A stretch of 64,000 bases of DNA. Origin: Mytilus californianus (Eukaryota). The position numbers were made by a program, and so were the translations under genes. Within the stretch, counting starts at the first letter, position 1. Each line of letters starts with the position of its first letter. A model generated the notes under the pieces. It made no database searches. It was not told the DNA's origin and saw only the letters and a list, made by a program, of their open reading frames with translations. Positions 1 to 54,927 of the stretch are shown one piece after another. The stretch is from the NCBI RefSeq assembly GCF_021869535.1, contig NW_026262684.1, positions 62,001 through 126,000 of the forward strand. Reading direction: 5' to 3'.

Positions 1-26
1 TGTAATAATTGAGACATCAGGTGGAG
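1..26 (-). CDS. Gene C exon 3, 5' part (start of an Ig domain)
   Basis: Acceptor ttttcgttAG at 27-28, then CT CCA CCT GAT GTC TCA ATT ATT ACA (PPDVSIIT). Matches gene B exon 3 start (PPDVSINT, 46396). Confidence 0.8.
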
Positions 27-3000
27 CTAACGAAAAGAAACTGGACATGAAAAGATTTTAATGTTAAATTTATTTTGAAGTTATGGGCAATATGTTTAAG
101 GAGAAATAAGACATTTAATTACAACATATTAACATGATTAATACATGGCACTAACACTCAATATACCCATTTGAATATTTTGCTTCCATCAATGGTCGTC
201 CTAAATACAAAATATTCGTTATTCAAATGTTTCAAAAGTTGAAGCAAATGTATCACAAACTAACACTGAAAAATGTACATCATCTAAGTAATAATAAGTA
301 TGCGGGAAGTAACATCATCGGTTTTATCTGTTAACATAATTTAACGTCTCAGCTTTCATGACTTCACCTTGATTTACAGATTGGCATATCAAAAGGCATT
401 TGATAATTGTTGCAGGTCCAATTGTGACGAATGGATGTTTAAGAACTTTTGAGTCGTTTGGTTGCTGACGTATACGCTGACGCGTATACCCAACTTTCCC
501 CCTTTTTATATCAGACCATGACAACAACATTACTTCAAAGTAATATTATGCTAGTATAAAATCATTCCTAACTAGTTCTACGCTTGATAGCATGAACAAT
601 TGATATAATTATCTATGGAAGAAAACAAACAAAAAACTATTATTAACATTTAGCATATGGTCTGCGAAACGTAACAGTAAAATATTACGAATTATCGACG
701 CAAACCATGCAACTTACATACATTTGTACAGGTAAAATCGAAAACAGGTGCATTTAACTCAGTCTATGATTGCAGGAATGTTATGTTGCAATCAACATGT
801 AGGATAATTAACAACTCGGGAAATATACTTCGAGCAGATATTAACTTCATGTGCAAGCTTTTGCAAACATAAATGGTTAAAACTGAATAGCATAGATACA
901 GTTGGAATCAGTTTAAATCTTCAGAAACTATCAGGAGAACTATTCTTCAACAGTTTATAGAACAGTTCTACTCTCACCTTTGGAACAATTTTCGATAGTA
1001 CTTTTCGTTTGATACAGGTATTTATTTAAATTATTTAACGAATTTGTGTAATTCATATATTCAATTTACTGATTGTTTTTATTGTAATTTTATTTATTCT
1101 ATTTATTTCGTTGTATTAATCTTATTCATTTTATTTATCTGTTTTCAATTATTTAGTATTGTTTATAAAAAAAAAGTGTTCCTGGACCTGTATAAACTTG
1201 TATAAATTTCTTTATAAAGAAAACATACTACTAGTCATGTTTATAATAATTACGATAATATACACTGCTAATGTTTTTTCTATATAAAAAACAAATATAA
1301 TGAGTACTTACTCTGTATGAGAACTCTGTAAAAACGACTAATTGTTGTGTCATTTTCTACGTATTGACAATGGTATTTTCCTTCATCATCAGACGAAAAT
1401 TTTTTAATCATTAATTTACAAGTTCTGTTCTTATAACTTCCCACAATATAATATTTTGATAAGTTTAATTTTGAATTACGTAGCGTCCCCTGTGAATATG
1501 GCATTAATGTTTCCTCGTCCAGACCGTTTATCCTTGATGCTGACTTATTTGGTCCATCCCAGAGCCCGTTTGTTTGATTGGTGCATGTACAATTTAAGAC
1601 AACTGTATCACCTGTTTTCACAAATACTTCCTGTATGATTCCTATAGATTATAAAAAAAAAGTTATATCGTTAGAACTTTAGTAATCCACAAATGCAAAC
1701 AGAAACGAAATATTTTTTTCTGCCTGTAAAATGCATTAATGCCTTATATATATTTATGGGCTATTGATCCATAGATATATATTTGTGTGGAGTATGTCTA
1801 ACGAGAGATTGCAAATAACATGATTTATTGATTGATTGTGTTTAAGTCACTTTCAGCACTCTTTGCTATATCGCGGCGGTCAATTATTTAGGTGGAGGAA
1901 GCTGGAGTGTTTATGGAGAATCACCGACAATCAGCAAGAAAATTGGCGCTACAATTTTGAAATATAGATAACATTATAAATCCAGCACTTTAACCTACTG
2001 ATTGAGAAATCAAAGGAAACCTATTGCTCATATAAGCGTCTTTTGGTACAAAAATAGATGAAGATTGTTATAGAGTAATTAATATGTCATACAGAAAGCT
2101 TTTCTATCAAAAACATATTAAAACTTTATTCAAAGTGTTGTAGTTCGTACTTAAATCGTAGTTAACATTTTCGTGTTATCTTATTGATCTTAGTCAAGTG
2201 GACTGTTAGTACCGCTGGATATGACCAGACTAGAAGCTTGTACTTTTGTTTTCCTTGCAAATACAAAAATGATTTCATTGTAATTTGGTGTTATGAAGTT
2301 TTGAAATCTATTTTAAGGATGTTGGCTGATCTTAATGTTGTTTTTTTGTAAGATATTCGAAAACCTCTGATGTTATCCATGTATTTCTATTACAAGTTTT
2401 GCCCACTCACTCCTTCTTTTCTTTTCATATTTTGATTACATACAATTCAAAAAGCCAGTTTTGAAAATCTTATAAAATCCTTGTTATTATTTCATAGTTT
2501 TTGAAAGAAAAAAAGGATGTCATTGTTAGATGCAAGAAAAATCTAGAAAGAATCATTTAACTATATACATGAGATGGATTATATCTATATAAAAAAAGAA
2601 GGACACGGACCTCTCATTTTTGTTTTTTTTTTTTTATCTGAATATACTATCAAGTTATAATATTTTGAAACAGAGCAGACAACATCCTTATATACGAAAG
2701 TATTTTCCTCATGCATAGCTGTAAGTCGTTTTCCTGATTTGGCAATACTTTTGGCACTTTTTAGGCTTTTAACCTTTAACATTTGTAATAGGCTTTGATT
2801 TGAAATAGTTTTGCCCACCATTTTTACTAATATAAATATAACTAAATGATTTCATCCTAATTTTTGTTGTAGCATTTTTCGATATATAATAAAAAATTTT
2901 ATGTCTATCATTTAATGTATCAATCATGATAGTAGAACAGTTTTGTTCCTAGACAATCGCTGATAGTTTTATTGGTCTTACAACGGCTGATTATTTTGCA

Positions 3001-3084
3001 TATTACTATTAAGACTTATATTATATTACCTGCAACCTGCAACACTTTCAGGAATACAAAAATAAATTTCTTTCTGTCCCACAT
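1..3084 (-). CDS. IgSF receptor gene C, partial (exons 3030-3084, 1312-1641, <1-26; continues off the left edge); recent paralog of gene B
   Basis: GT-AG bounded phase-1 exons splice in frame to MWDRKKFIFVFLKVLQVAG-IIQEVFVKTGDTVVLNCTC...DEGKYHCQY...VLIQ-TPPDVSIIT. Colinear with gene B exons 1-3. Confidence 0.85.
1312..1641 (-). CDS. Gene C exon 2: V-type Ig domain
   Basis: 330 nt, acceptor ctatAG (1642-43), donor GTAAGT (1306-1311). Has B-strand Cys (LNC), C-strand Trp (LWDGP) and the D-x-G-x-Y-x-C motif (DEGKYHC). Confidence 0.92.
1822..1940 (-). mobile_element. Truncated V-domain-type SINE with (AATC)n tail
   Basis: Plus strand gattgattg...cgcggcggtcaattatttaggtggaggaagctggagtg...gagaatcaccgac. 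Same family as the cleaner copy at 25479-25662. Confidence 0.6.
3030..3084 (-). CDS. Gene C exon 1: putative signal peptide
   Basis: 55 nt (18 codons +1), MWDRKKFIFVFLKVLQVA-G, donor GTAATA. Conserved in gene B (54873-54927). A polypyrimidine-AG 2 nt before the ATG suggests an upstream UTR intron. Confidence 0.65.
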
Positions 3085-3466
3085 GTCTAAAAAAAGAAAG
3101 TAGAATACTAATTGGTTTATTTCAGTTTAAATAAATTGTACAGATTTATATCATATGGTCTATTTTACTTGCTTTACGTTATTCTAAATATAAGAATCTG
3201 ACATTCACTATATACGTAAAAAGTTTTACCTGTTTTTTCATTCTTTATTGTGTTTTCCCCGTGTTAATTACATACATTAAATTTATTGAGCTATAATCAT
3301 TTGACATCCACAATATTTAATAACATAAAAACTTCCTTCTAAAATCACTGCCGGTCACGGCAAAAATATTAAATCGGAAATTGGATTTCAATAGAGATGT
3401 ATCAATGAACACTATTTTTTTAATATTCAGTATGACGCTTCATATTATTCTTGTAGTGACGTATTA

Positions 3467-4994
3467 TCTATATTACTAAATGAATAGAGTTGAAATTGGG
3501 TGTCGCGTTTTCTTCTTTCACATAAAATCCACGAATATTACTAAATGAATAGAGTTGAAATTGGGTGTCGCGTTTTCTTCTTTCACATAAAATCCACGAA
3601 TATTGTTTTATACCATAAAGGGGTAATGACCAGTGTAGTTTATTATGTGTTCATTTCAAGATCTTTTTGGGGGTATTTGGGGGTTAAAATCGAACAAAAG
3701 CCAGTTCGGATCGACCATCCTTCACGACGTTCGGCTCTGAAATTTACGTGCCGTCATCATTTCCGTCATTGCACATCTGCTCGGCAAAATTAAATTTAAT
3801 TTCGTAGCAGATACAGTTAATATTGACCTTACACTGAAACACTTTGTGATAGCCATTCCTTTGACGCTCTCAGCAATTTAACAACAGATTTTTACACGTC
3901 AAGAGCTTTTCCTTCTGGGGAACTTTCAACATGAAAAGGGTGGGGGGATTACTTCAGTTTTCGGTTAAAAATGTGTACCGAAGTGCGGCTGGAATGTGAC
4001 CCACCCCCATTCATATATTAATGCATAAAATTTTCAGCCCACTCATATATAGGGGTGGTTCTGAGCACGGAAACACTTGAAATCAGGAGCCGATCCAGGA
4101 TTTGAAGGGGGCGCAAAATATTGTTCCACCGAGAGGAGCGTGGTGCAAAATCCTTTTGGGTAAAAATGTCAAAATTAAACCAGGTTTTTAATAGAATGGT
4201 GCAAACAAGATATTTGATCAACACAAAAAACATGTGATGAAGATTGGTTCATTAGCAACAAATGATTTAAGATTTCAGTTTAAAAAGGTGTAAACGAGAT
4301 AATTTGCCAATCGGAGGGAGGTGGGAAAATTACTATTATATAGTTTGCAGTTGAAAAATAAATGTGATTTGCTATAACGAATGTTCAACTGTGTTACTGT
4401 CACCACTTATTGATAATGGTTATTTGAACTCTTCCATATTTAGAAGCACCAAAGAGGTCACCCAATAGAGGGTTGGTATAATGACACCACGTTCACATCC
4501 CGTATTAGGCACGGACCATTTGATTTTCCGTGGGATGGGGCTGGGATTGTCATCCGCACCTGGATTTTTTATCATTCAATGTTTTCCCTATGTGTTCAGT
4601 ACACAAAATTTATTTCCAAAATTTTTTGGGGGACTGGCAAAACTGCTTGAAGTGCTAGACAGATTTTTTATTTTTACCAAATCAGGGTCAGGATATTTTT
4701 TGTAAAAGATCCCAGTCAGTTTTCACTCTATATGTCACCAATTAAAGGTATTTATAAACGCATATTATATTGATCAGTGCAATGCATCCAGGGTATAGCA
4801 ATGACATAACATATGATTAGATCACAAACGCCAATAGTTTCTGTCGAGAAGACTATTCTTTTGGGTGTCATATTGAGTGGTGGTATTTCGTCTGTGACAC
4901 GCTTCAAAAAGATTTAAGATCTTAATATCGCCTTACACCAAAACTATATATCTTCAAATTATGAACCAAAGTGTATTTCGCGGGTATTTTCTAG
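3467..4994 (+). mobile_element. Non-autonomous Helitron-like insertion
   Basis: Starts A|TCTATATTACTAAA and ends cgcgggtattttCTAG|T, with no TSD. Absent at the paralogous site (about 55300: cgtattg|tatgtttt). The subterminal hairpin is not clearly intact. Confidence 0.7.
3470..3604. repeat. Exact 65-bp tandem duplication at the 5' end of the Helitron-like element
   Basis: ctaaatgaatagagttgaaattgggtgtcgcg...aatccacgaatatt occurs at 3476 and again at 3541. Confidence 0.95.
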
Positions 4995-7275
4995 TATGTT
5001 TTATTTGAAAAGCGAATATGTAATATTCGACAATAATCTTAACACTGGTTTTGTCTGTTATTTTGACAATAATATGTTCAATTCGATCTCGATATATTTA
5101 TGGTTCTTGTTTTTTTCCCTCACTAATTAATCTAGATATAAACGTTAGAAATCACTGTCCAGTTACAATATAAATGTTACAGTGACTGCACGAATTAAGA
5201 AGCAAATGAATTGTAAGATGATGAAAAATACAAGTCATTTTGTGAGTAATTTATCATATCAGCTATATAAAGGGGGTGCTATTGTTTTTCTCTTGTTTCA
5301 AAACATTTATCACGGAGAAGCAGATTTTTTTTTCACAATCTTTTAACGAACTTTTCAGAATAATTGTTTTCTCTCCTACTCTTCAAAAGAATGACCTTTC
5401 GTTCTGAAAGAAAATATAGGTATATGAGAGACTAATAACGCCGAATAAAAATTAAAAAATAATTCATGTAAGCCATAGATTTGTTGGAAATGTTCACATG
5501 GCCTGAGGGAGTTGAAACCCGTATTAACATATAATAAAAACCTATTCTTATCTTTATCATTTAGAAACTAAGGTCCAACTCCCTGAAGGCAATTCTAGCA
5601 ATGAAGTAATTTGCTTCGAACCCACACACTTTATAAAGTATTATTGTCATAATTATATTCAATATGAACCTGCGTGTGTAGACTTATTTTGTGTCATTGG
5701 TTTTCCAGTTTTTTATGTAGCTAATTCCTTTTATTTCCCTGTTAACGTAATATGTATATAGGAAACAATTCAGATACAAAATGTGCCATCGTTTCCTGGG
5801 GTCAATTGCTATTGTTGTTTCAAAATTTTCCAGCCCTTATCAATAATAATTTCCTTGTTTGATTGAAAATAATTCTTGGGTTCTCCATAATGCAAATTTA
5901 TATTTAAACTTGACATTCTGTAGAGTTATTTTAAACATACAATTTAAATTTCATCTTGACATAAATGTTTACCGAATGTAACACTAACTCTCATTGCAAG
6001 GACTCGCGTAGTTTTGGTGTATTGTACGAACTTAACTTAACAATCTAATCTGTGAAAATGTACTTGCACTGAACGACGAACTGCAACCTTATATATATTC
6101 ATAATTAAGAAATTGATACTCAAGAGGTCAATGATTTAGATTGACTACAAAATGAACATTTAAGTTTTGATATTAGATGAACTTTTTATAACTAAATCAA
6201 CAATGAATACACAACCTTTGAAAAACGATATGTTACATAACTAGTCTAATAGATAAATACATAATTTATTATCTATATGAAACAGAAATAGTATAAATAG
6301 TGTTTGTTTTTGCTACCATTTCTCCATGTGTTTCTCCAATTCAGCTCCTTGCACTTTTTGTTTATAACCACCAAGGATTTTAGAAATAATCGACTAATAA
6401 AATCGTGTGGTTTTAATCGCCATATTGCTACGAAAAATCATAGTATTTTGAAAATTTTGTAAAACGATGAAACTGTATTGATGTATTTCAACATTGGCAA
6501 GATTAATTGGTTAATTAAAATTTTCATAAACTTCACCACTTGATTGTCTCTGTTTCAACATTTTTCTGAAAATCGTTGTTATCATTTATTACTGATGTGT
6601 CGTCACGATTGTCTGTTGAAGAGTTAGCACTTGGTCCAAATATCATATTATTATGATTTATTATCCTTCATCATCATAAAACTGTTTTGGATCACCACGT
6701 TGGATTTCTTCTCGCGCCACAGAAAGCCAAAAAATTAGTGAACCAATTCAACCAATTACAAATCATCCAATAACACTGCCAAGTATTAACCAGAAAAAAA
6801 CCGGTTGTGTCAGCAAATTTATATTCCTCATTTTAAAATTTGATAATATAAGACTTAAATAGTTTTTTTTATTGTATACGTGATAAGTTAACTGGGTTCT
6901 CATATCATTACGATAATTGTTAGTATTGGTTATATTTACTGGAAGGATAATCATAAAACAAATATTGAGCGTTTCACAAAAAAATAAATCCTGTTCATCC
7001 TTCAACACCCGTTAAACACCCAACCCGTTACAATAGGACTGTACAAATAGTATAAACATCACAACCTGGTCAAACTTTGATCGGAATTTTATCCGAAATG
7101 AAGAGTGTATGATTCAACGTGCAAAAAATACTAAAAAGTGGTATGCTTTCCGTGGTATATGCTGTATTATTAAATGATATGAGCAAATCAGCCCTAATAC
7201 GGATAAATCAGCATGTGCAATACTGATAACGTTGCCTGTCGATATAAATCAAGAGTTACTATTGCTTTTCAGACA

Positions 7276-7305
7276 GGGCCAATACGGAAAAAGCCGTATT
7301 GGCCC
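7276..7305. other. Perfect 12-bp-stem hairpin GGGCCAATACGG-aaaaag-CCGTATTGGCCC inside a copy-1-specific segment
   Basis: Directly visible. Related GGGCCAATAC motifs at about 7190, 7308, 7389 and 7421. Confidence 0.8.
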
Positions 7306-8923
7306 ATGGGCTAATACGGGACGTTCAATTCCGGTTTCAATTTTCTTACGCCTTACATAACTTTGGACGTATCTACTCTTCGAGTCTCGGGTCCAATACA
7401 GCTGACCTCGAATCTATAACAGGGCCAATACAGAAACAGCCAGTTAATAACACTATAATATGCTTCTACAGCTTATAAATTCATTATAACGTATTTGAAG
7501 TTTATGATTATATTTGTGTTATAATGTAAATATTGTGTCTGGTATTGGTAGGATTAATATCCTTCATGGTTTATGACTTTGCTGTATTACATCTTCTAAA
7601 ATATATTGCTTCCAATTCTAGAGAGAACTATAGAGTGCTCTCCTATTAGAATGGTTAACTCTTTTAAGCTGGTTTTCATTGTTGCGGATGTTGTTTGATA
7701 CGGTAATATTTATAATTGTCTCGTGATGGTCTTGTCTTCAATGTCATAATAATAGTTTTGAGTGTCTTTCTAAATTAATTTGACTTTTATATTCTAAAAT
7801 AAAAAAAATATCACCTATGCATGTTTGCTTTCTGTTTCATTATAGGAGCACCACTATAAAAACAAACACACTGTATCGGCACAGATTGATGTATGCCTTT
7901 ACTGACCCAGTCCATCAACCTTGCCGTGCAAAGGTCTTAGTACGCGAAAATGAACCTTCCCAAAAATCATGATAAATGCAATGCAAATAAAACATACATT
8001 TGCAATCACCCAATAATGTTTTGAAGCTCGAAAACGTATTTCAACATAGTGGCAATTTTGTTTTCATGTTATTTTCTGGCACACGATAGGAACCTCGTCA
8101 ATTGTTGTCGTTTGTTATATATTCTTATGTTATATTTAATTTACAAAATCTGATTCTGATGGTCGATCTCTATTATTTACTACTAGATGTATACTTAAGT
8201 CGATTATCAGGTTAATGTTTCTCAGAATGTTTTTCTATTGTTGGAGACCAAATATTTTTAGAGATCGTGCAAACTATGTATTTCTGGCAGCAATTTTACA
8301 AAAAGGCTGTTCAAATCATAAAGTACCACGTCGAAAAATATTGCAAAGAAATGGCATTTTCTTTTCAGAACAGGTGTAATACTTTTCATTACTGCGAAAG
8401 ACTATTGTGTCGTGTTATTGAGTCTTTAATTAAATTCAAGACAGCATTATTCATTATTTCTTTGTTCTATATTACATTGTTTCATCAAAGCAAGAGTCTG
8501 TATCTGTACACGAATACTATTACTTAAGCCTGCAATCAGTACTTTCTGCCAACAGTTCAGTTACTAATTTGACAGACACATCTTTGTAAATTATATGCTG
8601 AAAAATTGGCATGTTTTTTCAATGCTTAACTATTTTCAAGATATGTCAATATCCTCATTTTGTTACTGTATGATTTTTAATAAGGTAAAATATATAGCAT
8701 ATTATTATTCATTATTCATTTGTATTACACAATATAGTCCTCTATATGCATGGAATAATTTCTCAATGGGCTTAAGGCAAGTAACAATCAATGAATTAAG
8801 CATTACACAATGATATCCTTTCATACAATCAGTGCAAAGTTTGCTTGGAATTCAGAAATAATACACCATATATATTTTTAAAAAGATATATCGATAAAAT
8901 TGGAAAACAAAATATGAACCTGA

Positions 8924-9110
8924 TAGTTAGTTTTCTCGTTTGAATTGTTTTACATTTGTCATTTCGGGGCCTTTTATAGCTGACTATGCGGTATGGGCTT
9001 TGCTCATTGTTGATGGCTGTACTGTGACCTATAATTGTTGATATGTGTGTCATTTGGTCTCTTGCGGAGAGTTGTCTCCTTGGCAATCATACCACATCTT
9101 CTTTTTATAT
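8924..9110 (-). repeat. High-copy dispersed short repeat (head gatgtggtatgattgccaa..gagacaactctcc); class unresolved
   Basis: Further copies at 14597-14960(+), 15283-15490(+), 38010-38298(-), 58304-58496(-, paralog of this copy) and 63095-63158(-, fragment). Confidence 0.85.
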
Positions 9111-16460: not shown

Positions 16461-17611
16461 GTTTGCTTTTAAAGCGGTATATGTTTTGCTATCTTTTAAA
16501 ACTCTTTTAGTATTTTCAAACTGGAAGTTGAAATATTCGATCTCATTTAGTCTCATAATTTTACATGTCATAGTATTATACTATTGTTCTCTGATGTCTA
16601 CCCATGCTTTATATTATGTAATATATGTTGTTAATTTTGCCATAGCATGTCTATGCTTTAATTTGCAATAAAGATTCATTCATTCATTTAAATTTGAAAC
16701 TAGTTACTAATAACTTATCATCAATTGTAAATGCCAGATTGGACCTTAAACTATTCTCTGATCATATTGTTTTTAATTGAAACCTTATATGAGTTATTAA
16801 CTGATTTGATTTTGATTTGTTTAGAAAGTTTTTTGAAGTCAATTTAGATCCGTTTAGTTTTTGTGCATACTGTTTAGTAGATGATATTTACTTGTAAAGA
16901 TCAACAACATACTGAATTGTCTGTAAATCTACTGAATTTACTGCAGTAGATAACTTTCAAAATTGTTTGATAGACTGTACATGACCTAATAATTTCTTGT
17001 TGTGACTTGGCAGATGATATTTAGGTCAAAATGGCATGAAACTAATATACAACGGACCGAATATGACATTTATAAACTGGAAGTACCTAGTTGATTTATT
17101 TTTAACTGAAACCCTATAAAGCAATTATGCATCTTGGTGTAAACCAACAGTTGCTTATTATTTCCCTTTTGTCATACAATTTATATGTTTGGCATTAGAT
17201 CGATTTTAAGTCATCTTCTGAAATCGAAAGTTACAGCGTTTACCTTCAAATGTGAATTTAAACGTGTAAAGAATTGCTCACTGAACAACAAGTTATATGT
17301 TGTTATTGTATTTCCCCCATGCAAGAATTTTAAAATAGTATCTTTTAATTTATTTGACATTTGGGCATTTGTTCTTCCCATTGCTCTAATTGAAAAATGA
17401 TACCCAAAATCTTTTTCGTCGTACATATTTTATGAATACATGATTATACAACTTTATACTTATTAAATTATTCTATTAATTTATTGCACATTTGTTAAAC
17501 ATTTATATTAACCATACATTTGTCTTTATAAAGCTCAGTACAGAAAACACAAATCTATTATGCAGTTACTTTCGTAGTTCAGATTTATTGCATCCTCTTG
17601 TATATAACAAG

Positions 17612-38009: not shown

Positions 38010-38298
38010 AAAGGTGTATGTGCTAATACAGACTGGAGCTTACTGTTCAGTAGTTGTCGTTTGGTGGTGTGATTCATAGGTATTTCTCGTTTTGCATATA
38101 GGTTAGACCGTTGGTTTTCCTGTTTGAATTGTTTTACACTAGTCATTTTGGGGCCCTTTATAGCTTGCTGTTCGGTGTGAGCCAAGGCTCCGTGTTGAAA
38201 GCCGTACTTTGACCTATACTTATTAACTTTAAATACATTGTGACTTGGATGGAGAGTTGTCTCATTGGCACTCAGTCACACCACATCTTATTTATATA
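38010..38298 (-). repeat. Copy of the gatgtggtatg dispersed repeat
   Basis: Reverse complement of the 15283-15490 type: ggggccctttatagcttgctgttcgg...gagagttgtctcattggcac. Confidence 0.8.
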
Positions 38299-41096: not shown

Positions 41097-41629
41097 TTAT
41101 TTTCTCTTGTATATTACAAGCCAAGGATGTATGCGAGTGAGAATATCCATTGCAATATTTAAGTGTTTTGGAGTTTTTGCCAACCCGCTTAATGGAAATA
41201 TTGTCGTGTTTTGATAATTGCAGGAGACGATATTGCTATAATGATGCATATCGATATCGCAAGGATTAATCGCTTGATACGGATTTTCATAACCATCACC
41301 AGGTTGTTTAATTGAAGAGCTGTCATCAGAGCTAACGACATCAGTCCTTAATACAATATCGTTCCTTTCGATGATGCTTGATACATTATCATTATTCATA
41401 TCTGCATCGTTGGCTATATGATCAAAAATAACATTGTTATGATTTAAAGTTTCTATATTATCATAGTTATCTTCTGGGGTCATTTGAAGAATATTGCTAC
41501 TGCAATTGTTAGCCCTCTTAAGGCAGCAGTAAATATGCGAGCAAACACATATGATTAGAATTCCTCCAACTAAGCTGCCCATAATTATCCAGCAAAAGCC
41601 ATGTGCAAATGTAGATTTAACGTCATCGT
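41097..41629 (-). CDS. Gene B terminal exon: TM plus cytoplasmic tail
   Basis: Acceptor 41630-31. WIIMGSLVGGILIICVCSHIYC, then YDNI, GDGYENPYQAI, YSNI, YQNT. Clear paralog of 17612-18111. Confidence 0.9.
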
Positions 41630-46115: not shown

Positions 46116-46396
46116 CTTCGTAATGTACCAAGACTTGTTTTTTCTGATAAAGCTCTCCGTTTATATCCGAGATGCCATTGTTTACTCTCACATATATTTC
46201 CCGCTGTTTTGATAATTGTCTTTCTGAAGTGCAAGTGGACCGTCATGTGTGTTTTCTTTATATCGTATATGTTTACCAGACTCCGATGTATGTTCCCATT
46301 CTTTGAAAGTGTATGGCCCAGGATCGCCGGAAGTATGACATTCAAGGTAAATTTTATCTTCTAATTGTGTTGTATTTATTGAGACATCAGGCGGAG
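46116..46396 (-). pseudogene. Gene B exon 3: Ig domain with 1-bp deletion in the F-strand Cys codon
   Basis: ...GKYM TG-AGA GTA AAC AAT GGC; restoring one base gives KYMCRVNNG, matching gene A YVCRVSNG. Confidence 0.88.
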
Positions 46397-47109
46397 CTAA
46401 TGCAAACAAACCGGATATTAACTTTGTTTCTTAATTATAATGTTAAATTTATTTTGTATGTTTTTGTCTTACTTCAAGTAATACTAGTAGCTAATATGTT
46501 TAAAGAGAAATAAGATAAGAATGTTTTACATTTAATTACAAAACATAAATAGTCGATACCTACACATCATCACTTGTAGCGTTAATGCAAATATGGTATT
46601 GCGACATTACACGATAAAACATTTCATCTTTAACACTCAATATATGCAGTTGAATATTTTGTCTCCATCAATGGCCGCCCTCGAAACAAAATATTCGTTA
46701 CTCAAATGTATCAACAGTTGAAGCAAATTTATCTCAAATAAAACTAAATACATCATCTAAAGAATAATGAGAATGCAGGAAGTATCTGTTAACATACATG
46801 TAGTTAAAAGTCTCAGCTTTTTTTAACTGACGGTGATCTAAACATTTGCATATTAACCATGCACTTTATAGATGCTGAAGGTCAAATGTTGACGTAAGAA
46901 CTATTGAGCTGTTTGGTTGCTGACGTATGACTAACATTTTCCCTTTTATATTGGACCATGGCGACGGTTTTGTCAAGACATTCAAGACATTCAAAATAAT
47001 ATCATGTTAGTACAAGATCATTCCTAACTAGGTACTCCTTGGTAACATGAACAATTGATATATTTAACTATAGAAAAAAACATAAAAATATTATAATCCA
47101 TAATTGGCA

Positions 47110-48230
47110 CATGCAGTCAGGATTCTACTTTGTCAAAATTATCTCCCCATTACGGCACTTAATTTTTATAATCGTAAAAATGGAAGCCATTGTAGTGATG
47201 ACGCGCTGTCAATTTAGCTCTTGAAAACCGATAAATTTATCCACATCGTATCCTTACGATCCTTACATGCCTGTTGTATTTCAAAAGACACATGTATCTA
47301 CTAGCTATTGAGCATCATTTAATGTACTTTTCCGCATTTGGGCAACTTAAAACTATTGTCTGATCGGTTGTCAGGGGGAATTTTTGAAAGTTCAAAAATA
47401 TTTAAAAAAATTCTAATTAATTTTTTCGTGGAAGGGCAGACTAAAAATTTTCAGAGGTTGAAGACTAATTACCCTAGATAACACACAAAAAAATTTTTTT
47501 TTTATGTTATGCATTTTTAAGATCCACCAGAAAAATTTGTCGTCAAGTACTTTTAGTAAAAATTTGTTATTCGAACACACCTACTCTGTTGTTATGACTC
47601 ATTAGAAAGGTATTTCATTTGACCCATATATTTCATCTTTTAGTACTGTAAATTTTTAATGTTATTGTGTCAACCTACAGCCTAAATATATAAAAATAAT
47701 AGAATCTGAAGCGAGATGATGTATCAAATATTTTTCTTTTATACGTTTTCAAGACAGAATAGTCAACTCAAACATGCCTGAACCTAAATAGGTGTACTCG
47801 ACTTTCCCTTTTCGATGAAATTATTGCCTATTTTGGGGATTTTTTTCCAACAAACTGTCACCGGGGGCAGAGATGCAAATTAATGTTTTAAAAAGATAAA
47901 TCTATTGTCTTTCTTTGGAATTTTTTCGGCGGAATTTATGCTTATGCACAAAAAAGATCCACGTGAATTTGCACCTACCACAATCGACTGTTTTGTGAAA
48001 ATTGTCTATAATTTAAAATTTTACAAATATCTCGAAGCTCAATTCAATAATTTAAGTAAAAACACATACATAAGATGCATAAAATCGTAAATTAAGCACA
48101 TTCATTAAATTTTTAAAGCCTATAGAAACAGATGTAAACAATTCAAATTTACCAACTTCGCCTTTTTTACCTTCTCTAACAAAGATTTCCATTTCTATTG
48201 TTTAATTTCAACTGGGTTTCCGCCTGCATG
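47110..48230. mobile_element. Copy-2-specific 1.1-kb insertion with short inverted ends (MITE-like)
   Basis: catgcagtcagga ... tttccgcctgcatg. Absent at about 650-680 of copy 1; no clear TSD. Confidence 0.45.
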
Positions 48231-49234
48231 ATCATCAAAATGAAACCGTAAACTAATACGAATTATCTACGCAAACCATGCATTATACATATATTTGTAC
48301 AGGTTCAATCGAAAACAGGTGAGTTTAACTCAATCATTGATTGCAGCAATGTTATGTTGCAATCAAAATGTATGATTATTAACAACTCGGATAATATCCA
48401 TCGAGCAAATATTAACTTCATATGCAAAATTTTGCAAACATAAATGGTCATAACTGAATAGCATAGGTATAGTTGGAATCAGTTCAAATCTTTCAGTAAC
48501 TATCAGGAGAACTGTTCTACAACAGTTTATAGAACAGTTCTCCTCTCACCTTTCGAACAGTTTTCGTCAGTCATTTTCTTTTGATACAGTTATTTATTAA
48601 ATTTATTTAACCAATTTGTTCAATGCATCTACATTTATTCAATCTATTTACTGTTTTATTGTAATTTTATTTATTCTATTGATATTGTTGTATTAACTTT
48701 ATTCATTTTATTTATCTGTTTTCAATTATTTAGTATTGTTTATTAAAAATAATAAGTATTCCTAGACCTGTATAAACCTCTATAAATGTCTTTCTAAAGT
48801 GAACATACTACTAGTCCTGCCTATGATAATTACGATAATATACACTGCAAATGTTATACTATATAAAAAGAGAAATATTGGAGATTAAAATTTAGGAAAT
48901 ATTGACAAATAACAGACCGAAAACATACATTCAAGACTTGCATTACTTGTACTTTTTAATCTTTTTTTTTTTTATCCAAAACGACTAACAATGTACAGGA
49001 AAACTACAGCTAACTACTCTCATTCTGAATCAAGATCTAACTGCTACTGATATTCACGCCAAGTAAAACTGTTTTACCCGTGAACAATATCTGACAATTG
49101 AATGCATAAACCACATAGAGTAATAAAAATAAAAATGTAAACATGGTTAATGTACACAACATTTTTCATCTTCAATAAACATTCGATGCATCCAATGGTG
49201 GCAATCTTTTAACAAACGTATAAGGAGTACTTAC

Positions 49235-49564
49235 TCTGTATGAGCACTCTGTAAACATGACTAATTGCTGTGTCATTTTCTACGTATTGACAATGGTATT
49301 TTCCTTCATCATTAGACGAAAACTCTTTAATCATTAAATTACAAGTTCTGTTCTTATAACTTCCCACAATATAATATTCTGATAAGTTTAATTTTGAATT
49401 AAGTAGCATCCCCTGTGCATATGGCAATAATTTTTCCTCGTACAGACCGTTTATCCTTGGTGCTGACTTATTTGGTCCATCCCAGAGCCCGTTGGTTTGA
49501 TTGGTGCATGAACAATTTAAGACAACTGTATCACCTGTGTTCACAAGTACTTCCTGTATGATTC
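49235..49564 (-). CDS. Gene B exon 2: V-type Ig domain
   Basis: 330 nt, 310/330 identical to 1312-1641 by hand count, same splice sites. Confidence 0.92.
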
Positions 49565-49743
49565 CTATAGATTATAAAAAAAGTTATATAGTTAGAACTT
49601 TAGTAATCCACAAATAAAAACGAAATATTTTTCAAAGGTCATTCTGCCTTTAAAATGCATAAACGACTTATAGATATTTATGAGCTATATATCCATAGAT
49701 CAATATTTGTGTGGGGTATGCCTAACGAGAGATTACAAATAAA

Positions 49744-49833
49744 TTGATTGATTGATTGATTGTGTTTAAGTCACTTTCAGCACTCTGCTATATCGCGGCG
49801 GTCAATTATTTTGGTGGAGGAAGCCAGAGTATT
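49744..49833 (-). mobile_element. V-type SINE (paralog of 1822-1940) split by the Penelope-like insertion; resumes at about 53754-53785
   Basis: gagtatt|insert|tagagagaaccaccgag versus the uninterrupted gagtgtttatggagaatcaccgac at about 1906. Confidence 0.75.
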
Positions 49834-52800
49834 CACAGCATGATTGAAAACAAGTAGAATAAATACTATTATACTGGATGACACGTCGCCCAGGATAAAA
49901 AGGTGTCAATCGGATATTGTCAGGGATACAATAACACAGATTACATCAGATGTCCCCAGGACCATCTTAAAGGATGTAATGAAAACGACACATGTGCAGT
50001 CTTCTGATTCCTCGTTGTACTATAAACATTCAGACAATTTTGTTTATATTCGGCCCTGTACTGTTCAACTTTCAGATATTTTAGATTTCAATGATAACTT
50101 ACAATATTGCTCTATTTCCAAATGTAACCGTAAAAATTGTAAAACCTGTGGTATAATAATATCTGATACCCATTTTCAAAGTAACTTGACCACCAAAAGT
50201 TACAATACACACAGTCATGAGGATTAAAATTGTACTGCTTCCAATGTTGTGTACGGTATTGAATGTGCTTTTTGTGGACTGATCTACGGCGGGGAAACTC
50301 GACAAAGACTCAATTTAAGAATGAATGACCATCGGTCCAATGTTAATGATCCTAATAACAACAAATTTTATTCAGCCTGACCATTCTATTGTGTCAATGA
50401 AAGTCCGGATTATAGAGAAAATATATCATTCAACAAATGACCCCATATTGAGCACACCATATCATCTACAAAAAGAAGACTTTTGGATAAGAGAGTTGGG
50501 AACAACCATTCCCTATGGATACAATGACAAATTTGATGTTGTAGCTATTTTGTCTAGTCCCAGGTGTAGTACTGTCAATAAATTACAATTAGTTAACACT
50601 TCTGCTCGACGAAATAGAAGTCATGGTCACAGAAATTATACACCACCTGCTGTTCACACCGTGACAATTGATAGTCTGTTATCGTATGTTCAAAAACACC
50701 ATATCAGAACTTAATTATACTCCATTCCATTATCTAAACTGTATTTACTATTTCAAGAGGCCCACACTACTTCCGTTATTGATTCTACTTCTGTTTTGTA
50801 TAGATTAGTTGCAATAATCATGGACATTGCTAACCATAGACTAGTCAAACCCGTATCAACTACTTCCAAAAATGAGGAAACACGCAATTTTTATAAAGTA
50901 GAATTCGCCAATAAAGGTTAAGATGCTATCAATATTAGCAATATATTTTCCACCAAAAATCTGTACAAAAAACTATACCTGATTACTTCAAAAATAAAGC
51001 TACACCTGTAATTTCATAAACTTACACCAAGTCGATTGCATCCAAGATTTTCAACCACAAAAGGGTTTTAGAGACCTTTAACCTCAAAGATGAGAAATCC
51101 AAACCTGGGATTGCTCATGTGCATCGTCAAAATACAATTATAGTCCAAATAATCATGTTATTACTGTCGACCTTTAGCATCGTAACCAATGAACAACTAA
51201 GAGAGTTGTTGGCCAAGGGACCAAAATATAGAATTCCCCAGTCCATCAACTGGAAAAAGAACTTCAGGTTACTGATGGATGCAGTTGAGGACTATGCTAG
51301 AAAATGGGTAAAGCGCGAACCAGACGAACCAGAACTGGACACTTTGTCTGAATGGATCAAAGCCATTCGATCATGCATTCAGACGTGCATTCAGAAACTA
51401 CGATGTGCTATGAGCATACGGGTTTCTAACCCATTCAAAAACCATGAGGTTGTGGATGCTCTATCCACTTTGCATGACAAATGTGTCATTGTTTCAGCAG
51501 ATAAAGCCTCCAATAATATTGTCTTCGAATGTAAAAACCATTTTTTCCAATGTCTCACAAAAGAGCTTGGAATAAATAGCACAACTGGTAATCCTACATA
51601 TTCTTTAACATCATTTACAAAGGATGAAATTTTACAAAATCACAAATCTGTCCTTCTTTCTTTTGGTATTTACATTGAAGAAAACGAAGAAAATCTACCG
51701 TCATTATACTGGATATCAAACTTCACAAAACTCCGTCTAAAGAACGATACATAGCTGGATCATCAAGATGTTCGAATAAACATCTTTCTAAAGTGCTGAC
51801 TACTATTCTTTCTACAGTAAAAGATGGCCTTCAAGAATATTGTGATGAGATATATTCAACCGGTGGTGTCAATCCGATGTGGATTCTTAAAAATTCTCAA
51901 GATCTACTGCTAAATCTTAGATCACAATCTCTGCAATTTTGAAGCAACATTAAGACATTTGATTTTTCAAATCTTTACACTACTATTCCCCATGCTCAAT
52001 TGAAGGATCGACTTCACCATCTCGTTAAACAGAGCTTTTTCGATACAAATGGGAATCGTAGATATAAATGTCTTGTTTTGGGTTATAATAATTCTTATTT
52101 TGTGAAGAATCACACTGATTCTATCAGAAAATACACTGAAGATGATATTATTAAGATGCTGGACTTTTTAATCGACAATAATTTGTTGAGTTTGGAGGAT
52201 TGATATTTCAACAGACAGTCGGTATTCCAAAGTGTACTAATTGTGCACCCCTTCGGGCCGATTTGTTTTTGAACTCGTATGAAACAGAATTCATTCAGAA
52301 CCTTGTAAAAGACAAAAAGAAAAAGCACCTTGCAAAATTCTTTAATTTTACTCTCAGATATATTGATGATGTCCTATCACTAAATAACACATATTTCAGT
52401 CAGTACTTTCATCTCATATATCCCAGTGAACTTGAAATTAAGGATACTACTGATACTAGAAGGACTGCTTCATACCTTGATCGTTTCCTGAAATTGACAC
52501 AGATGGAAGACTTCACACTAAAATCTATGACAAACGGGATGATTTCTACTTCCCAATTATCAATTTCCCGTTTTCTCAGCAGTAACATACCCTCTGCTCC
52601 GTCATATGATGTTTACATATCTCAATTGATACGTCATGCTCGTGCATGTTCTCACTATACAGACCTCATACGGGAGTGTGCTCCTCACGCAGAAACTGAT
52701 CCAACAGAGTTATGAGGGGGAAAGATTAAAAATGACACTCCGTAAATGTTATTGACACCATCACGAATTGGTAGATCTATACGATGTGTCTGTGTCTAAA

Positions 52801-53753
52801 CTGACTAACGACATTTTTATCACGTCTTAGATTGTGGTTTAACATCTATGTCGTCGGTCTGCTAAGTACCGAACGTGACCTATTCCCGAATATGACTGAT
52901 TTGTCAAGTGTGAATTTGCATTGCTATATGACGTGTCTCGGTATTTATACATCCAACATGCATGTATTTAGTTATGTTTCTTAATTAGTTGGTTCGGTTG
53001 GATATTGTGTTATGTCTTATCGTTTGTGGTTTGAATTCTGTATTTTCGGTACATTTCACATATGTCATATTTGTCAGTATAGTCGAGTTAATTTCCATTT
53101 TCCGTGGATAAAGTATTGTGTTAGTCCAAATAATTATGATCTCGTCACAGCATTAATCTAAAATAGCCTTTCAAGACCGTCATTATAATTATAATTATTT
53201 GGATTAGTATTGTGAAAATTATTGTAAATTTTTGGATCTCGTTTCATATAATTGTATGAATTTCAGGATTAAATATACGTTAGATAAATACATCACTGTT
53301 TGTGGTGTGCTGTGCTGTTGTTAAAGGAGGATGTCCGTTGTTATTCTGCGGTTTACACGTTGAAATATACTATTATATTATTTATCTATGCGTGTCTCTG
53401 TGCTGAGTGTAATTGCGTTTGTTTGTACTGTATTCCTGTCACAAAGTGATTTTAGCGATATTTTTTAACATTGCCATATAAACGGGAGGTTTGGCTAGCC
53501 ATATAACCAGGTTCAACCAACCATGTTTTCTTAAAATGTCCTGTACCAAGTCAGGAATATGTCAGTTGTTATCAAATAGTCCGTTTCTATGTATTTTGAC
53601 GTTTGTTTTGTTGCATTTCAGTGTTTCTGTTGTTCCGTTGTTTTCCTCTTATAGTTGATGTGTTTCCCTCGGTTTTAGTTTGTAACCCGAATTTTTTTTT
53701 CTCTCAATCGATTTATGACTTTTGAACAGCGTTATACTACTGTTACCTTTATT
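49834..53753 (+). mobile_element. Penelope-like retroelement with permuted domains (GIY-YIG - CxC linker - RT), Naiad-type, decayed; antisense in gene B intron 1
   Basis: CNRKNCKTC; NVVYGIEC..CGLIYGGET (GIY-YIG) and EDFWIRELGT..PYG.ND; DCSC at 51109-20; KGPKYR; KTFDFSNLYT; GIP..TNCAP..ADLF; RYIDDVL. Ends at TAG 52828-30, then a 0.9-kb tail. Many stops and frameshifts; tatt on both flanks. Confidence 0.9.
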
Positions 53754-54872
53754 TATTTAGAGAGAACCACCGAGAATCAGCAGGAAAATGACGCTACAAT
53801 TTTGAAAAATAGATCACATTATAAATCCAGCCTTTTAACCTACAGATTTAGATATCCATGGAAATCTGTTGCTCATATTATCGTCTTTTGATACAAAAAT
53901 ATATGAAGATTGTTAAAAGTAATTACTATGTCTTACAGAAGGCTTTTCGGTCAAAAAAATATTAAAAATTTAACCAAAGTGTCGTAGCTCTAGTTAAATC
54001 GTAGTTAACATTTTCGTGTTATCTCATTGATCTTACTATGGTGGACTAAGTCTGGTGGACTGTTAGTACCAATGGATACGACCAGACTAGAAGTCTGCAC
54101 TTTGGTTTTCCATGCATATACAACAATAATGTTATTGAAATTTGGTGTTATGAAGTTTTGAAATTAAGTTTTAGGGTGTTGTCTGATCTTGATTTTGATT
54201 TTTTGTCAGATATTCGAAAACCTCTGATATTATCCATATATTGCCATTACAAGTTATGCCCACTCACTCCTTCCTTTCTTTTCATATTTTTATTACATAC
54301 AATTCAAAAAGCCAGTTTTGAATATCTTATAAAATCCTTCTTATTATTTCATAGTTTTTGAAAGATAAAAAGATGCCAATGTTAGATGCAAGAGAAATCT
54401 TGAGAGAAGCATTTTACTATATATATAAAATGGCTTATATCTACATGTATATACAAGAATAAGGACACGGACTACTCATTTTTTTTTATCTGAATATACT
54501 ATCAAGTCTTTTGAGCAGACAATATCCTTTTATAAAAAATTTATTTTCCTCATGCATAGCTGTAATTCGTTTCCTGATTTGGGTATATTTTTTGCCCTTT
54601 TTATGCTTTAAGCCTTCAACTTTTGTATTAGCTTTGATTTGAAATGGTTTTGCCTACCATTTGTACTAGTATAAGTATAACTGAATGGTTTCAACCTAAA
54701 TTTGTTTTGCATTTTTAGATAAGTAATCACATTTGTAATGTCTATCATTTAAAGTGTCAATCATGATAGTAGAATATTTTCGTTCCTAGACAATCGCTGA
54801 TAGTTTTATCGGTCTTACAACGGCTGAATATTCGGCTCATTATTATTAAATTAAAGACAAATATTATATTAC

Positions 54873-54927
54873 CTGCAACCTGCAACACTTTTAGGAATAC
54901 AAAAATAAATTTCTGTCTGTCCCACAT
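54873..54927 (-). CDS. Gene B exon 1: putative signal peptide
   Basis: 55 nt, MWDRQKFIFVFLKVLQVA-G, donor GTAATA. Confidence 0.65.

What the first reader, a model, noticed from the sequence alone, without database searches (positions are those of the whole stretch)
1..54927. Tandem cluster of modular, diversifying IgV-headed receptors with phosphotyrosine tails: candidate invertebrate variable receptor family
Seen: three same-strand paralogs, one domain per phase-1 exon, differing architectures (A has 5 Ig + FN3; B has 3 Ig and no FN3), one intact, one frameshifted, one recently duplicated, all led by a V-type Ig. Known: clustered birth-and-death IgSF families with tyrosine-motif tails (KIR, LILR, Siglec, fish NITR) act in immune or self/non-self recognition. 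Inference: this may be an analogous bivalve family, which automated pipelines would probably label only nephrin- or hemicentin-like.
Basis: partly seen in the sequence, partly recalled or inferred. Interest (0 to 1): 0.8.

Follow-up and report, generated by a model that had tools for sequence, protein, structure and literature searches.

The report
Mussel-only Ig receptor gene cluster
This stretch of a Mytilus mussel genome holds part of a tandem row of antibody-like surface-receptor genes found only in mussels, all sharing one tyrosine-rich signalling tail. Every copy here is damaged or incomplete, and nothing yet shows an immune or "variable receptor" role.

Summary
On the minus strand lie gene A (signal peptide, V-type Ig, four more Ig domains, FN3, TM plus tail), gene B (signal peptide, V, two Ig, TM plus tail) and the first two exons of gene C. 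Each domain is one phase-1 exon.

Corrections:
- A is not fully intact. A TAG replaces the Trp of the family's conserved C-terminal PWLVIYK motif.
- B lacks one base in the F-strand Cys codon of its second Ig exon.
- B and C belong to an 11-14 kb segmental duplication with about 11% non-coding divergence, so it is not very recent.
- That duplication also carries a dead tail exon in each copy.

A profile of the tail finds 57 protein clusters. Every named one is Mytilus, under generic labels (NCAM, NEGR1, titin-like). The best-conserved tail positions are tyrosines: YDEI, and GYENPYQx[I/V]-x9-YSx[I/V], which is ITAM-like.

Diversifying selection is not shown (B vs C V exon: 17 non-synonymous and 3 synonymous changes, not significant). 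Immune expression is not shown either (one spliced contig in a sister species, itself carrying a stop codon).

Oyster CgIgR is a known bivalve precedent. This scan already reported what appears to be the same family on other DNA of this genome (s1-312180). My verdict is a new member of a known kind, of moderate interest.

The parts
26997..27060 (-). Gene A exon 1: ATG plus hydrophobic signal peptide, 64 nt, ends in phase 1, donor GTAATA
   Evidence: Read directly from the sequence; exon table
25773..26114 (-). Gene A V-type Ig exon (342 nt, phase 1-1)
   Evidence: Splice sites. Pfam Ig_3/ig/V-set hits are below the cut-off. AF2 model pLDDT 83.6. Best PDB matches are NEGR1/IgLON Ig1, CRTAM, antibody VL, CD8, CD96 and NITR10, Z 10.7-12.3.
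24804..25094 (-). Gene A Ig2 exon (291 nt, phase 1-1)
   Evidence: Matches the Ig2 of family proteins P0021, P0017, P0001 and P0020.
23068..23328 (-). Gene A Ig3 exon (261 nt, phase 1-1)
   Evidence: Pfam Ig_3 E 3e-6. Matches P0020 residues 243-338.
22342..22635 (-). Gene A Ig4 exon (294 nt, phase 1-1)
   Evidence: Pfam Ig_3 at 31 bits, above the cut-off. Paralogous to B's 46396-46116 exon.
20347..20667 (-). Gene A domain 5 (321 nt, phase 1-1): Ig-like fold that lacks the canonical B-F disulfide
   Evidence: No Pfam hit. Alignment A4. AF2 pLDDT 78.8. Foldseek matches KIT, CSF1R and NCAM Ig5 domains, TM 0.74-0.78.
19406..19696 (-). Gene A FN3 exon (291 nt, phase 1-1)
   Evidence: Pfam fn3 E 2.9e-6, 27.8 bits, above the cut-off of 25. 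Its 3' end is seen spliced to the tail exon.
17612..18111 (-). Gene A TM plus cytoplasmic tail exon, ending in TAG at 17612-17614. Tyrosine motifs: YDEI, YNNM, GDGYENPYQAI-x9-YSSI, YQNT, YINT
17585..17611 (-). In-frame remnant (LVIYKRMQ plus stop) of the family's conserved C-terminus, cut off by A's TAG
   Evidence: Translation. Relatives end in PWL[VI]IYK.
54873..54927 (-). Gene B exon 1: signal peptide (55 nt, phase 1)
   Evidence: differs from gene C's by one residue
49235..49564 (-). Gene B V-type Ig exon (330 nt, phase 1-1)
46116..46396 (-). Gene B Ig4-like exon (281 nt). One base is missing in the F-strand Cys codon at about 46188-46190, which shifts the frame and gives an immediate TGA
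   Evidence: Three-frame translation compared with P0001 and P0004
42480..42824 (-). Gene B domain-5-like exon (345 nt, phase 1-1)
41097..41629 (-). Gene B TM plus tail exon with the full C-terminal PWLVIYKRK and stop
3030..3084 (-). Gene C exon 1: signal peptide
1312..1641 (-). Gene C V-type Ig exon, 84% residue identity to B's. The later exons lie beyond the window start.
6397..6800 (-). Relic tail exon with many stops (EVYEN...INLANVEIHQYSFIV); dead before the duplication
   Evidence: tblastn; translations
56707..57020 (-). Second copy of the same relic tail exon
152..11242 (.). Segmental duplicate of 46631-60637 (71-90% identity in pieces). Carries the relic tail, the signal-peptide exon, the V exon and part of intron 2.
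   Evidence: Self-blastn; divergence figures
46631..60637 (.). The other copy of the segmental duplication. It has an extra 3.9-kb insertion at 49833-53756 in B's intron 1.

Best explanation
The window is a piece of a tandem array of a Mytilus-restricted family of type I membrane receptors of the immunoglobulin superfamily.

Each gene encodes a signal peptide, a V-type Ig head, a variable number of further Ig domains, sometimes an FN3 domain, then one exon carrying the TM helix and a tail of about 130-150 residues. Because every domain is a symmetrical phase-1 exon, domains can be lost, gained or shuffled without breaking the frame. That explains the different builds: 5 Ig plus FN3 in A, and 3 Ig in B.

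The array evolves by birth and death. It shows a segmental duplication (B/C), a frameshift (B), a late nonsense codon (A) and relic tail exons.

Inferred, not shown: ligand binding by the divergent ectodomain leads to phosphorylation of the conserved tail tyrosines (YDEI; GYENPYQx[I/V]-x9-YSx[I/V]; YQNT). These would then dock SH2 proteins directly, without an adaptor chain: a Syk/Shark-type tandem-SH2 kinase on the ITAM-like pair, and Src-family, Nck or Grb2-type SH2 domains on the others. The oyster receptor CgIgR works this way.

At this particular locus none of the three copies can be shown complete, so the local genes may be decaying members of a family that works elsewhere.
For: - Exon and domain anatomy with phase-1 borders, and one junction seen spliced.
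- Ig and FN3 assignments from Pfam and from models.
- Canonical V/I residues are conserved in 13 head domains: C23, L80, G91, Y93 and C95 invariant; G16 and W33 nearly so.
- Tail profile: 57 clusters at E<=1e-3, 38 at <=1e-10. 18 of the 20 clusters looked up carry a Mytilus name and none carries another genus.
- Over 95 tail instances the best-conserved columns are the tyrosines and their neighbours: Y of YDEI 65/67, GYENPY 67/74 and 72/73, HxY 67/70.
- Yxx[LIV]-x9-Yxx[LIV] is in register in 40 of 59 proteins.
- The ectodomain diverges faster than the tail. A vs B: V 32%, domain 5 23%, tail 42-45% identity. A tandem M. edulis pair: Ig exons 46-59%, tail 78%.
- Tandem neighbours also occur in M. 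edulis (L001) and on shared M. coruscus contigs.
- Duplication, frameshift, nonsense codon and relics.
- Precedent: oyster CgIgR has 5 Ig, a TM and an ITAM. It binds bacteria and recruits Syk (PMC6994640).
Against: - No phosphorylation, SH2 binding, ligand or tissue data exist for any member.
- The ITAM-like spacer is 9 residues, outside the classical 6-8.
- All the tyrosine motifs are also YxxPhi-type sorting signals.
- The raw RNA run of the same species gave no exon reads, though only 6% of it was read and the tissue is unknown.
- The only spliced contig, from the sister species, keeps one intron and has a stop codon in the FN3 exon.
- A lacks the conserved C-terminus, B is frameshifted and C is incomplete in the window.
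- The window's own V exons score below Pfam's V-set cut-off, and the C'/C'' region is poorly modelled.
Confidence: 0.65

Rival explanations
1. These are cell-adhesion or cell-cell recognition molecules of nerve, epithelium or development (nectin/Necl, IgLON, nephrin/Kirrel or NCAM-like), not immune receptors. The tail tyrosines would serve adhesion-linked signalling, as nephrin's YDxV motifs dock Nck.
For: - The V model's nearest solved structures include NEGR1/IgLON Ig1, Necl-1 and CRTAM.
- Domain 5 resembles NCAM Ig5 and DIP/Dpr domains.
- Ig repeats followed by FN3 next to the membrane is an adhesion-molecule layout.
- YDEI is close to nephrin's YDEV (established knowledge).
- Annotators named relatives NCAM and NEGR1.
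Against: - The family is restricted to one genus, tandemly expanded and full of pseudogenes. Adhesion molecules of those families are conserved orthologues across Bilateria.
- Antibody VL, CD8 and NITR V domains tie with the adhesion hits, within 1.5 Z units, so the fold does not discriminate.
Confidence: 0.2
2. The tail is mainly an endocytic or sorting module (several YxxPhi signals and an NPY element). On this view the proteins are uptake or phagocytic receptors that do not signal through an ITAM/Syk route.
For: - YDEI, YQAI and YSSI all fit YxxPhi.
- GYENPY recalls the GYENPTY internalisation and PTB-binding motif of APP (recalled knowledge, not tested).
Against: - The fixed 9-residue spacing and the acidic residue three places before the first tyrosine of the pair are conserved across the family. 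Sorting signals do not need either feature.
- YENP and YQNT fit Grb2-type pYxN docking (established knowledge).
- The two roles are not exclusive.
Confidence: 0.15
3. At this locus nothing works any more. A, B and C are all pseudogenes or dying alleles, and the window is a graveyard at the edge of a family that is active elsewhere.
For: - A has a TAG in place of the conserved Trp.
- B has a frameshift in the Cys codon.
- There are two relic tail exons.
- The sister-species transcript has a stop in the FN3 exon, 12 of 165 tail residues changed, and a retained intron.
- There were no exon reads in the same-species RNA run.
- The B vs C V exon evolves at omega about 1.5, as expected if one copy is unconstrained.
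Against: - A loses only 9 residues and keeps all tyrosine motifs.
- The FN3 stop is absent from the DNA runs X3 and X7, so it is an allele and not fixed.
- B's missing base and A's TAG could be allelic or assembly errors, and they could not be checked in reads.
- C's two visible exons are open.
- V-exon divergence (6%) is about half that of the flanks (9-14%), which suggests some constraint.
Confidence: 0.3

Closest known systems
Crassostrea gigas CgIgR (Sun et al. 2020, PMC6994640)
   Same: A bivalve type I receptor with five extracellular Ig domains, a TM and an ITAM in its own tail. The paper reports hemocyte expression, binding of bacteria and LPS, dimerisation and Syk recruitment. Gene A has the same overall build, and the paper supplies the proposed mechanism.
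   Different: - The tail profile finds no oyster protein at E<=1e-3, so the tails are not detectably homologous.
- A has an extra FN3 domain.
- The Mytilus motif has a 9-residue spacer and sits within a larger conserved tyrosine array (YDEI, YENP, YQNT, PWLxIYK).
- The Mytilus genes form a tandem multigene family.
- No functional data exist.
Hydractinia Alr family (Huene et al., doi 10.1101/2022.03.04.482883)
   Same: An invertebrate, lineage-restricted IgSF family clustered in the genome. It has a V-set first domain, further Ig domains, an FN3-like fold, a single TM, ITAMs in some tails, duplications, exon shuffling and pseudogenes.
   Different: - Alr Ig domains lack the canonical Cys-Trp-Cys pin, whereas the mussel V heads keep it.
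- Alr1 and Alr2 are proven allodeterminants, and nothing comparable is known here.
- No sequence relationship was found.
Vertebrate clustered immunoreceptors: KIR, LILR, CD33-related Siglecs, teleost NITR
   Same: - Tandem clusters, variable Ig-domain number, frequent pseudogenes and tyrosine-motif tails.
- NITR and Siglecs are V-headed.
- The NITR10 V domain is among the structural matches (Z 10.8-10.9).
   Different: - There is no ITIM and no charged TM residue in A or B, so the activating/inhibitory pairing typical of those families is absent.
- The ITAM-like motif sits on the receptor itself, not on an adaptor.
- KIR and LILR lack V domains.
- No homology beyond the Ig fold; high polymorphism or presence-absence variation is not shown.
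Nectin/Necl-CRTAM-CD96 and IgLON adhesion receptors
   Same: These are the nearest solved structures of the V head: CRTAM 3rbg (Foldseek E 5.9e-7) and NEGR1 6u6t (Z 12.3).
   Different: Those families are conserved across animals, have fixed architectures (three Ig domains) and carry other tails or GPI anchors. Identity is only 19-22%.
Drosophila Draper / CED-1 type phagocytic receptors
   Same: An invertebrate receptor carrying an ITAM-like pair with a long spacer, plus an NPxY-type element, in its own tail. It signals through the Syk homologue Shark (established knowledge; cited).
   Different: The ectodomain is EGF-repeat, not Ig, and it is a single conserved gene.

Membership tests
IgSF V-set domain (head domain) | Conserved core residues (Gly16, Cys23, Trp41, Leu89, Asp98, Tyr102, Cys104 in the numbering quoted) | tested here: met
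   In alignment A3 of 13 head domains, C23, L80, G91, Y93 and C95 are invariant and G16 and W33 nearly so. D/E stands two or three places before the Tyr.
IgSF V-set domain (head domain) | Pfam V-set score above the gathering cut-off (26 bits) | tested here: inconclusive
   The window exons score 16.6, 21.4 and 24.0 bits, below the cut-off. Relatives P0002 (66.7 bits) and P0017 (37.3 bits) are above it.
IgSF V-set domain (head domain) | V-type fold with C' and C'' strands between C and D | tested here: inconclusive
   [quoted passage not shown] The model shows only short bridges there, and pLDDT is below 50 at residues 42-46. The best matches are V and V-like domains, Z 10.7-12.3.
ITAM | Yxx[L/I]-x(6-9)-Yxx[L/I], as defined in the Alr paper | tested here: met
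   A has YQAI-x9-YSSI and B has YQAI-x9-YSNI. The same register occurs in 40 of 59 family proteins.
ITAM | Classical spacing of 6-8 residues | tested here: not met
   The spacer is 9 residues in virtually every matching member.
ITAM | Dual phosphorylation and binding of a tandem-SH2 kinase (Syk, ZAP-70 or Shark) | not testable with these tools
   Needs biochemistry. Syk recruitment by an ITAM receptor is reported in oyster (PMC6994640).
ITIM-bearing inhibitory receptors (KIR, LILR, Siglec, NITR type) | [S/I/V/L]xYxx[I/V/L] in the tail | tested here: not met
   None of the tyrosines in the A or B tails has S, I, V or L at -2 together with I, V or L at +3 (sequences, read by eye).
Adaptor-coupled activating receptors (KIR, LILR, NITR type) | Charged residue (K, R, D or E) inside the TM helix | tested here: not met
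   The TM segments of A and B contain no K, R, D or E.
Birth-and-death clustered immunoreceptor family (functional class) | Tandem same-strand paralogues with variable domain number and pseudogenes | tested here: met
Birth-and-death clustered immunoreceptor family (functional class) | Diversifying selection on, or high polymorphism of, the ligand-binding head | tested here: inconclusive
   B vs C V exon: 17 non-synonymous and 3 synonymous changes, omega 1.5, Fisher p 0.78. Gene A is held by all DNA runs listed for both species, with word shares that fit ordinary mussel heterozygosity.
Birth-and-death clustered immunoreceptor family (functional class) | Expression in immune cells or response to challenge | not testable with these tools
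   Run tissues are coded. There was one spliced contig only and no exon reads in X21.
CgIgR-like bivalve receptor | Five Ig domains, a TM and an ITAM in the receptor's own tail | tested here: met
   Gene A has V plus four Ig domains (plus FN3), a TM and an ITAM-like pair.
CgIgR-like bivalve receptor | Detectable sequence homology with the oyster protein | tested here: inconclusive
   The tail profile finds no protein named from any genus other than Mytilus. The CgIgR sequence itself was not available to compare.
Nephrin/Kirrel, NCAM, IgLON adhesion families | Conserved orthologues across Bilateria with a fixed architecture | tested here: not met
   The tail module is confined to Mytilus and the architectures vary.

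The most novel reading that the evidence does not exclude
The family might be a polymorphic self/non-self (allorecognition-type) receptor system of mussels. Its V heads would diversify between paralogues and individuals, and its ITAM-like tail would trigger hemocyte attack. That would bear on why mussels can or cannot reject transmissible cancer cells from other mussels. My data do not exclude this: the family is genus-restricted, clustered, modular, rich in null alleles, and changes mostly by amino-acid replacement in the one young V pair.
Probability: 0.06. Interest if true: 0.85.

Novelty: new member of a known kind. Interest (0 to 1): 0.4.

Why it matters
Bivalves lack antibodies yet resist many pathogens, and mussels in particular show very large gene presence-absence variation. 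A genus-specific, tandemly expanding family of V-headed receptors with one strongly conserved tyrosine module would be a concrete, countable candidate for cell-surface recognition in mussels. The tail exon is a convenient probe for a census across individuals and species.

As it stands, the work adds an uncharacterised family to a receptor type already shown to work in oyster (CgIgR). It also shows that database names such as NCAM, NEGR1 and titin-like hide that family. It does not yet show immune function or adaptive diversification.

Tried and rejected
- A sensitive tblastn (E up to 5) with 76 family proteins looked for hidden Ig2, Ig3 or FN3 relics in B's introns, and for Ig exons belonging to the relic tails. 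Nothing convincing turned up.
- I tested whether the duplication runs on past 11242/60637 to include an A-like gene beyond the window end. Only one 69%-identity repeat hit was found.
- Pfam on seven transposon-like ORFs (49844-52715 on the plus strand; 35905-36489 and 29442-29633 on the minus strand) gave no family at E<=0.01. Their reverse-transcriptase and recombinase look is by eye only.
- The raw RNA run X21 of the same species had no exon reads.
- RNA-labelled runs with small word shares (X16-X20) were not taken as expression, because high-copy intron repeats could explain them.
- The look-up of encoding contigs on P0005, the closest tail relative of A, found nothing on record.
- Literature searches for a description of this family found none: Mytilus with IgSF and ITAM; Mytilus with immunoreceptor tyrosine-based; and the mussel pan-genome paper searched for immunoglobulin terms.
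- The joined, spliced proteins of A and B were never built or searched. All searches were exon by exon, by reference.
- The species name was not verified. Other notes of this scan call the genome Mytilus californianus.

Full report
**What is in the window**

The window is AT-rich (about 31% G+C) and has no N runs. All the relevant coding pieces lie on the minus strand. Stop-free stretches, AG/GT borders and codon offsets give three gene units.

- **Gene A:** signal-peptide exon 27060-26997 (read), V 26114-25773, Ig2 25094-24804, Ig3 23328-23068, Ig4 22635-22342, domain 5 20667-20347, FN3 19696-19406, and TM plus tail 18111-17615 followed by TAG. The coding length is 2361 nt (787 codons).
- **Gene B:** signal peptide 54927-54873, V 49564-49235, Ig4-like 46396-46116, domain-5-like 42824-42480, and TM plus tail 41629-41100.
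- **Gene C:** signal peptide 3084-3030 and V 1641-1312. Its later exons lie beyond the window start.

Every internal exon begins at codon offset 1 and is a multiple of three long, except B's 281-nt Ig4-like exon. So 'one domain per phase-1 exon' is correct. This is also the usual layout of Ig-superfamily genes.

**Domain identities**

Pfam gives weak but consistent Ig hits for the V, Ig3 and Ig4 exons. Ig2 has only a marginal C2-set_2 hit (E 0.09), but it matches the Ig2 of family proteins. FN3 scores above its cut-off.

The window's V exons score just under the V-set cut-off, while full-length relatives score above it. In an alignment of 13 head domains, the Cys-Trp-Cys pin, the core Leu and the D/E-G-x-Y-x-C motif are conserved.

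An AlphaFold model of A's head (pLDDT 83.6) matches NEGR1/IgLON Ig1, CRTAM, Necl-1, CD8, CD96, antibody VL and catfish NITR10, all within Z 10.7-12.3. It is therefore a V-type (V/I) head, although the C'-C'' region is poorly modelled.

Domain 5 has no Pfam hit and lacks the B-F disulfide. It models as an Ig-like sandwich (pLDDT 78.8), closest to KIT, CSF1R and NCAM Ig5 domains (TM 0.74-0.78). 'Five Ig plus FN3' for A and 'three Ig, no FN3' for B therefore stand. A sensitive search found no hidden exon relics in B's introns.

**State of the three copies**

- **A** is open from ATG to stop. However, its TAG at 17612-17614 stands where relatives have the Trp of a conserved C-terminal PWL[V/I]IYK motif. 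The remnant LVIYKRMQ plus stop still follows in frame. A therefore lacks the last nine residues of the family's pattern.
- **B** has one base missing in the codon that encodes the F-strand Cys in relatives, at about 46188-46190. This gives an immediate TGA, and the rest of the domain continues in another frame.
- **C** shows two open exons only.

Self-comparison shows that 152-11242 and 46631-60637 are copies of one block, 71-90% identical in pieces. The V exons differ at 20 of 327 bases (17 non-synonymous, 3 synonymous). Flanking non-coding DNA differs by K 0.09-0.14.

Each copy of the block also carries a tail exon riddled with stops, at 6397-6800 and 56707-57020. The two relics share their defects, so that gene was already dead when the block duplicated. 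The B copy has an extra 3.9-kb insertion in intron 1. The duplication does not detectably continue past 11242/60637.

**The family**

I built a profile from the A and B tail exons (alignment A1) and searched it against 1.84 billion representative proteins. It found 57 clusters at E<=1e-3 and 38 at E<=1e-10. Of the 20 clusters looked up, 18 carry names, all from Mytilus coruscus, M. edulis, M. galloprovincialis or M. californianus. Two are known only from Logan assemblies.

The names are generic: NCAM, NEGR1, titin-like, Ig-like domain-containing, uncharacterized.

Architectures differ between members:
- V-Ig2-Ig3-Ig4-Ig5-TM-tail in the RefSeq model XP_071148147.1;
- V-TM-tail in XP_071149484.1;
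- V-FN3-tail and other builds in draft annotations, some of which are surely mis-predictions.

The M. edulis locus around XP_071148147.1 holds a second family gene on the same strand just upstream, again with one domain per exon. Several M. coruscus members share contigs.

An earlier report of this scan (s1-312180) describes a large mussel-only cluster of such genes on another piece of this genome. It reports one transcribed gene and several wrecks there. My results agree with it, so the scan has found this family before.

**The tail**

The A and B tails are 42-45% identical, against 32% for the V heads and 23% for domain 5. The tandem M. edulis pair shows the same contrast: tail 78%, Ig exons 46-59%.

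Over 95 tail instances, the most conserved columns are these:
- the Tyr of YDEI (65/67);
- G-Y-E-N-P-Y (67/74 and 72/73);
- H-x-Y (67/70).

The pair Yxx[I/V]-x9-Yxx[I/V] is in register in 40 of 59 proteins. It fits the ITAM definition used for Hydractinia Alr (x6-9) but not the classical x6-8. There is no ITIM and no charged TM residue.

By established SH2 preferences, YDEI resembles Src-family and Nck sites, and YENP and YQNT resemble Grb2 sites. These are inferences, not tests. All the sites are also YxxPhi-type sorting signals, which keeps a sorting or endocytic reading alive.

**Expression and variation**

One call of read-laying over 17615-23437 gave four results.

1. A 1.8-kb contig from a run of a sister species (labelled RNA by guess) joins 19406 to 18111, the predicted FN3-to-tail splice. 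It keeps the domain 5-FN3 intron. Applying its listed differences gives a stop codon in the FN3 exon (window 19661) and 12 changed residues of 165 in the tail.
2. That stop is absent from the two DNA runs laid, so it is an allele.
3. A raw RNA run of the same species as the window gave no exon reads. Only 6% of it was read, and the tissue is unknown.
4. Gene A is held by every DNA run listed for both species. The word shares fit about 1.6% and 4.4% divergence, so there is no sign of presence-absence variation for A, and an orthologue exists in the sister species.

The B vs C comparison gives omega about 1.5 but rests on 20 changes (Fisher p 0.78). It is also confounded by B being broken, and the exon is still less diverged than its flanks. 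'Diversifying' is therefore not demonstrated.

**Comparison with known systems**

The nearest working precedent is oyster CgIgR: five Ig domains, a TM and an ITAM. It is hemocyte-enriched, binds bacteria and recruits Syk. The mussel family has the same kind of build, but its tail is not detectably related and it is a tandem multigene family.

The nearest evolutionary analogue is the Hydractinia Alr family.

KIR, LILR, Siglec and NITR share the cluster dynamics. They do not share the tail logic, since there is no ITIM and no adaptor-coupling residue here. The nephrin, NCAM and IgLON families are excluded as homes by the genus restriction and variable architecture.

I found no paper describing this mussel family.

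**Limits**

Everything was done exon by exon, by reference. As a result, the window's own annotated proteins (if any) were not retrieved. The species was not verified here; other notes of the scan call it M. californianus.

**Verdict**

This is a real but uncharacterised, mussel-only member of a receptor kind already known in bivalves, and this scan has seen it before on other DNA. It is of moderate interest.

Noticed in passing
window 17585-17614: Gene A's stop is a TAG at the position of the conserved Trp of the family's C-terminal PWLVIYK motif, and the rest of the motif still follows in frame. The role of this very conserved C-terminal motif is unknown.
   Followed up: partly
window 19661 (plus-strand G>A in run X15): The only spliced contig of gene A's orthologue, from the sister species, carries a premature stop in the FN3 exon and retains the domain 5-FN3 intron. 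The stop is absent from DNA runs X3 and X7, so null alleles segregate.
   Followed up: partly
window 20904-20995 and 21781-22120: Two arrays of a 21-bp repeat (4.4 and 16.2 copies) lie in opposite orientation in gene A's Ig4-domain 5 intron. Contig depth there reaches thousands in DNA runs, so this is a very high-copy element of Mytilus genomes.
   Followed up: partly
window 27193-33274: Sets of 94-95% identical direct repeats (27193-27638/28253-28690, 27634-27898/28942-29206, 28002-28260/33023-33274) begin 133 bp upstream of gene A's ATG. A short ORF at 29442-29633 looks like a tyrosine recombinase by eye. This fits the Ngaro-type element of note s1-340097, but Pfam gave no hit.
   Followed up: partly
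window 49833-53756: A 3.9-kb insertion in gene B's intron 1 is absent from gene C's intron 1. Its plus-strand ORFs carry a reverse-transcriptase-like Y-I-D-D motif by eye, and a related fragment lies at 35905-36489 (minus strand). No Pfam hit at E<=0.01.
   Followed up: partly
window 11596-12086 and 15610-16118: Inverted repeats of about 500 bp (90% identity) flank about 3.5 kb between gene A's 3' end and the duplicated block. This may be a foldback or terminal-inverted-repeat element.
   Followed up: no
window 8926-9110, 14597-14782, 38110-38298, 58307-58496; L001:2851-3040: A dispersed repeat of about 185 bp (72-87% identity) is present in both orientations in the window and also in the M. 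edulis locus, so it is probably a SINE-like element.
   Followed up: no
L001:455-7451: In M. edulis a second family gene (Ig3, Ig4, domain 5 and tail exons) lies on the same strand just upstream of XP_071148147.1. Its tail is 78% identical to the neighbour's, but its Ig exons only 46-59%.
   Followed up: partly
proteins P0047-P0057: More distant carriers of the GYENPYQx[I/V]-x9-Y module have no Pfam-recognisable ectodomain and end in a further Y[I/V]NL motif. The tail module may therefore be shared with other mussel receptor families by exon shuffling.
   Followed up: no
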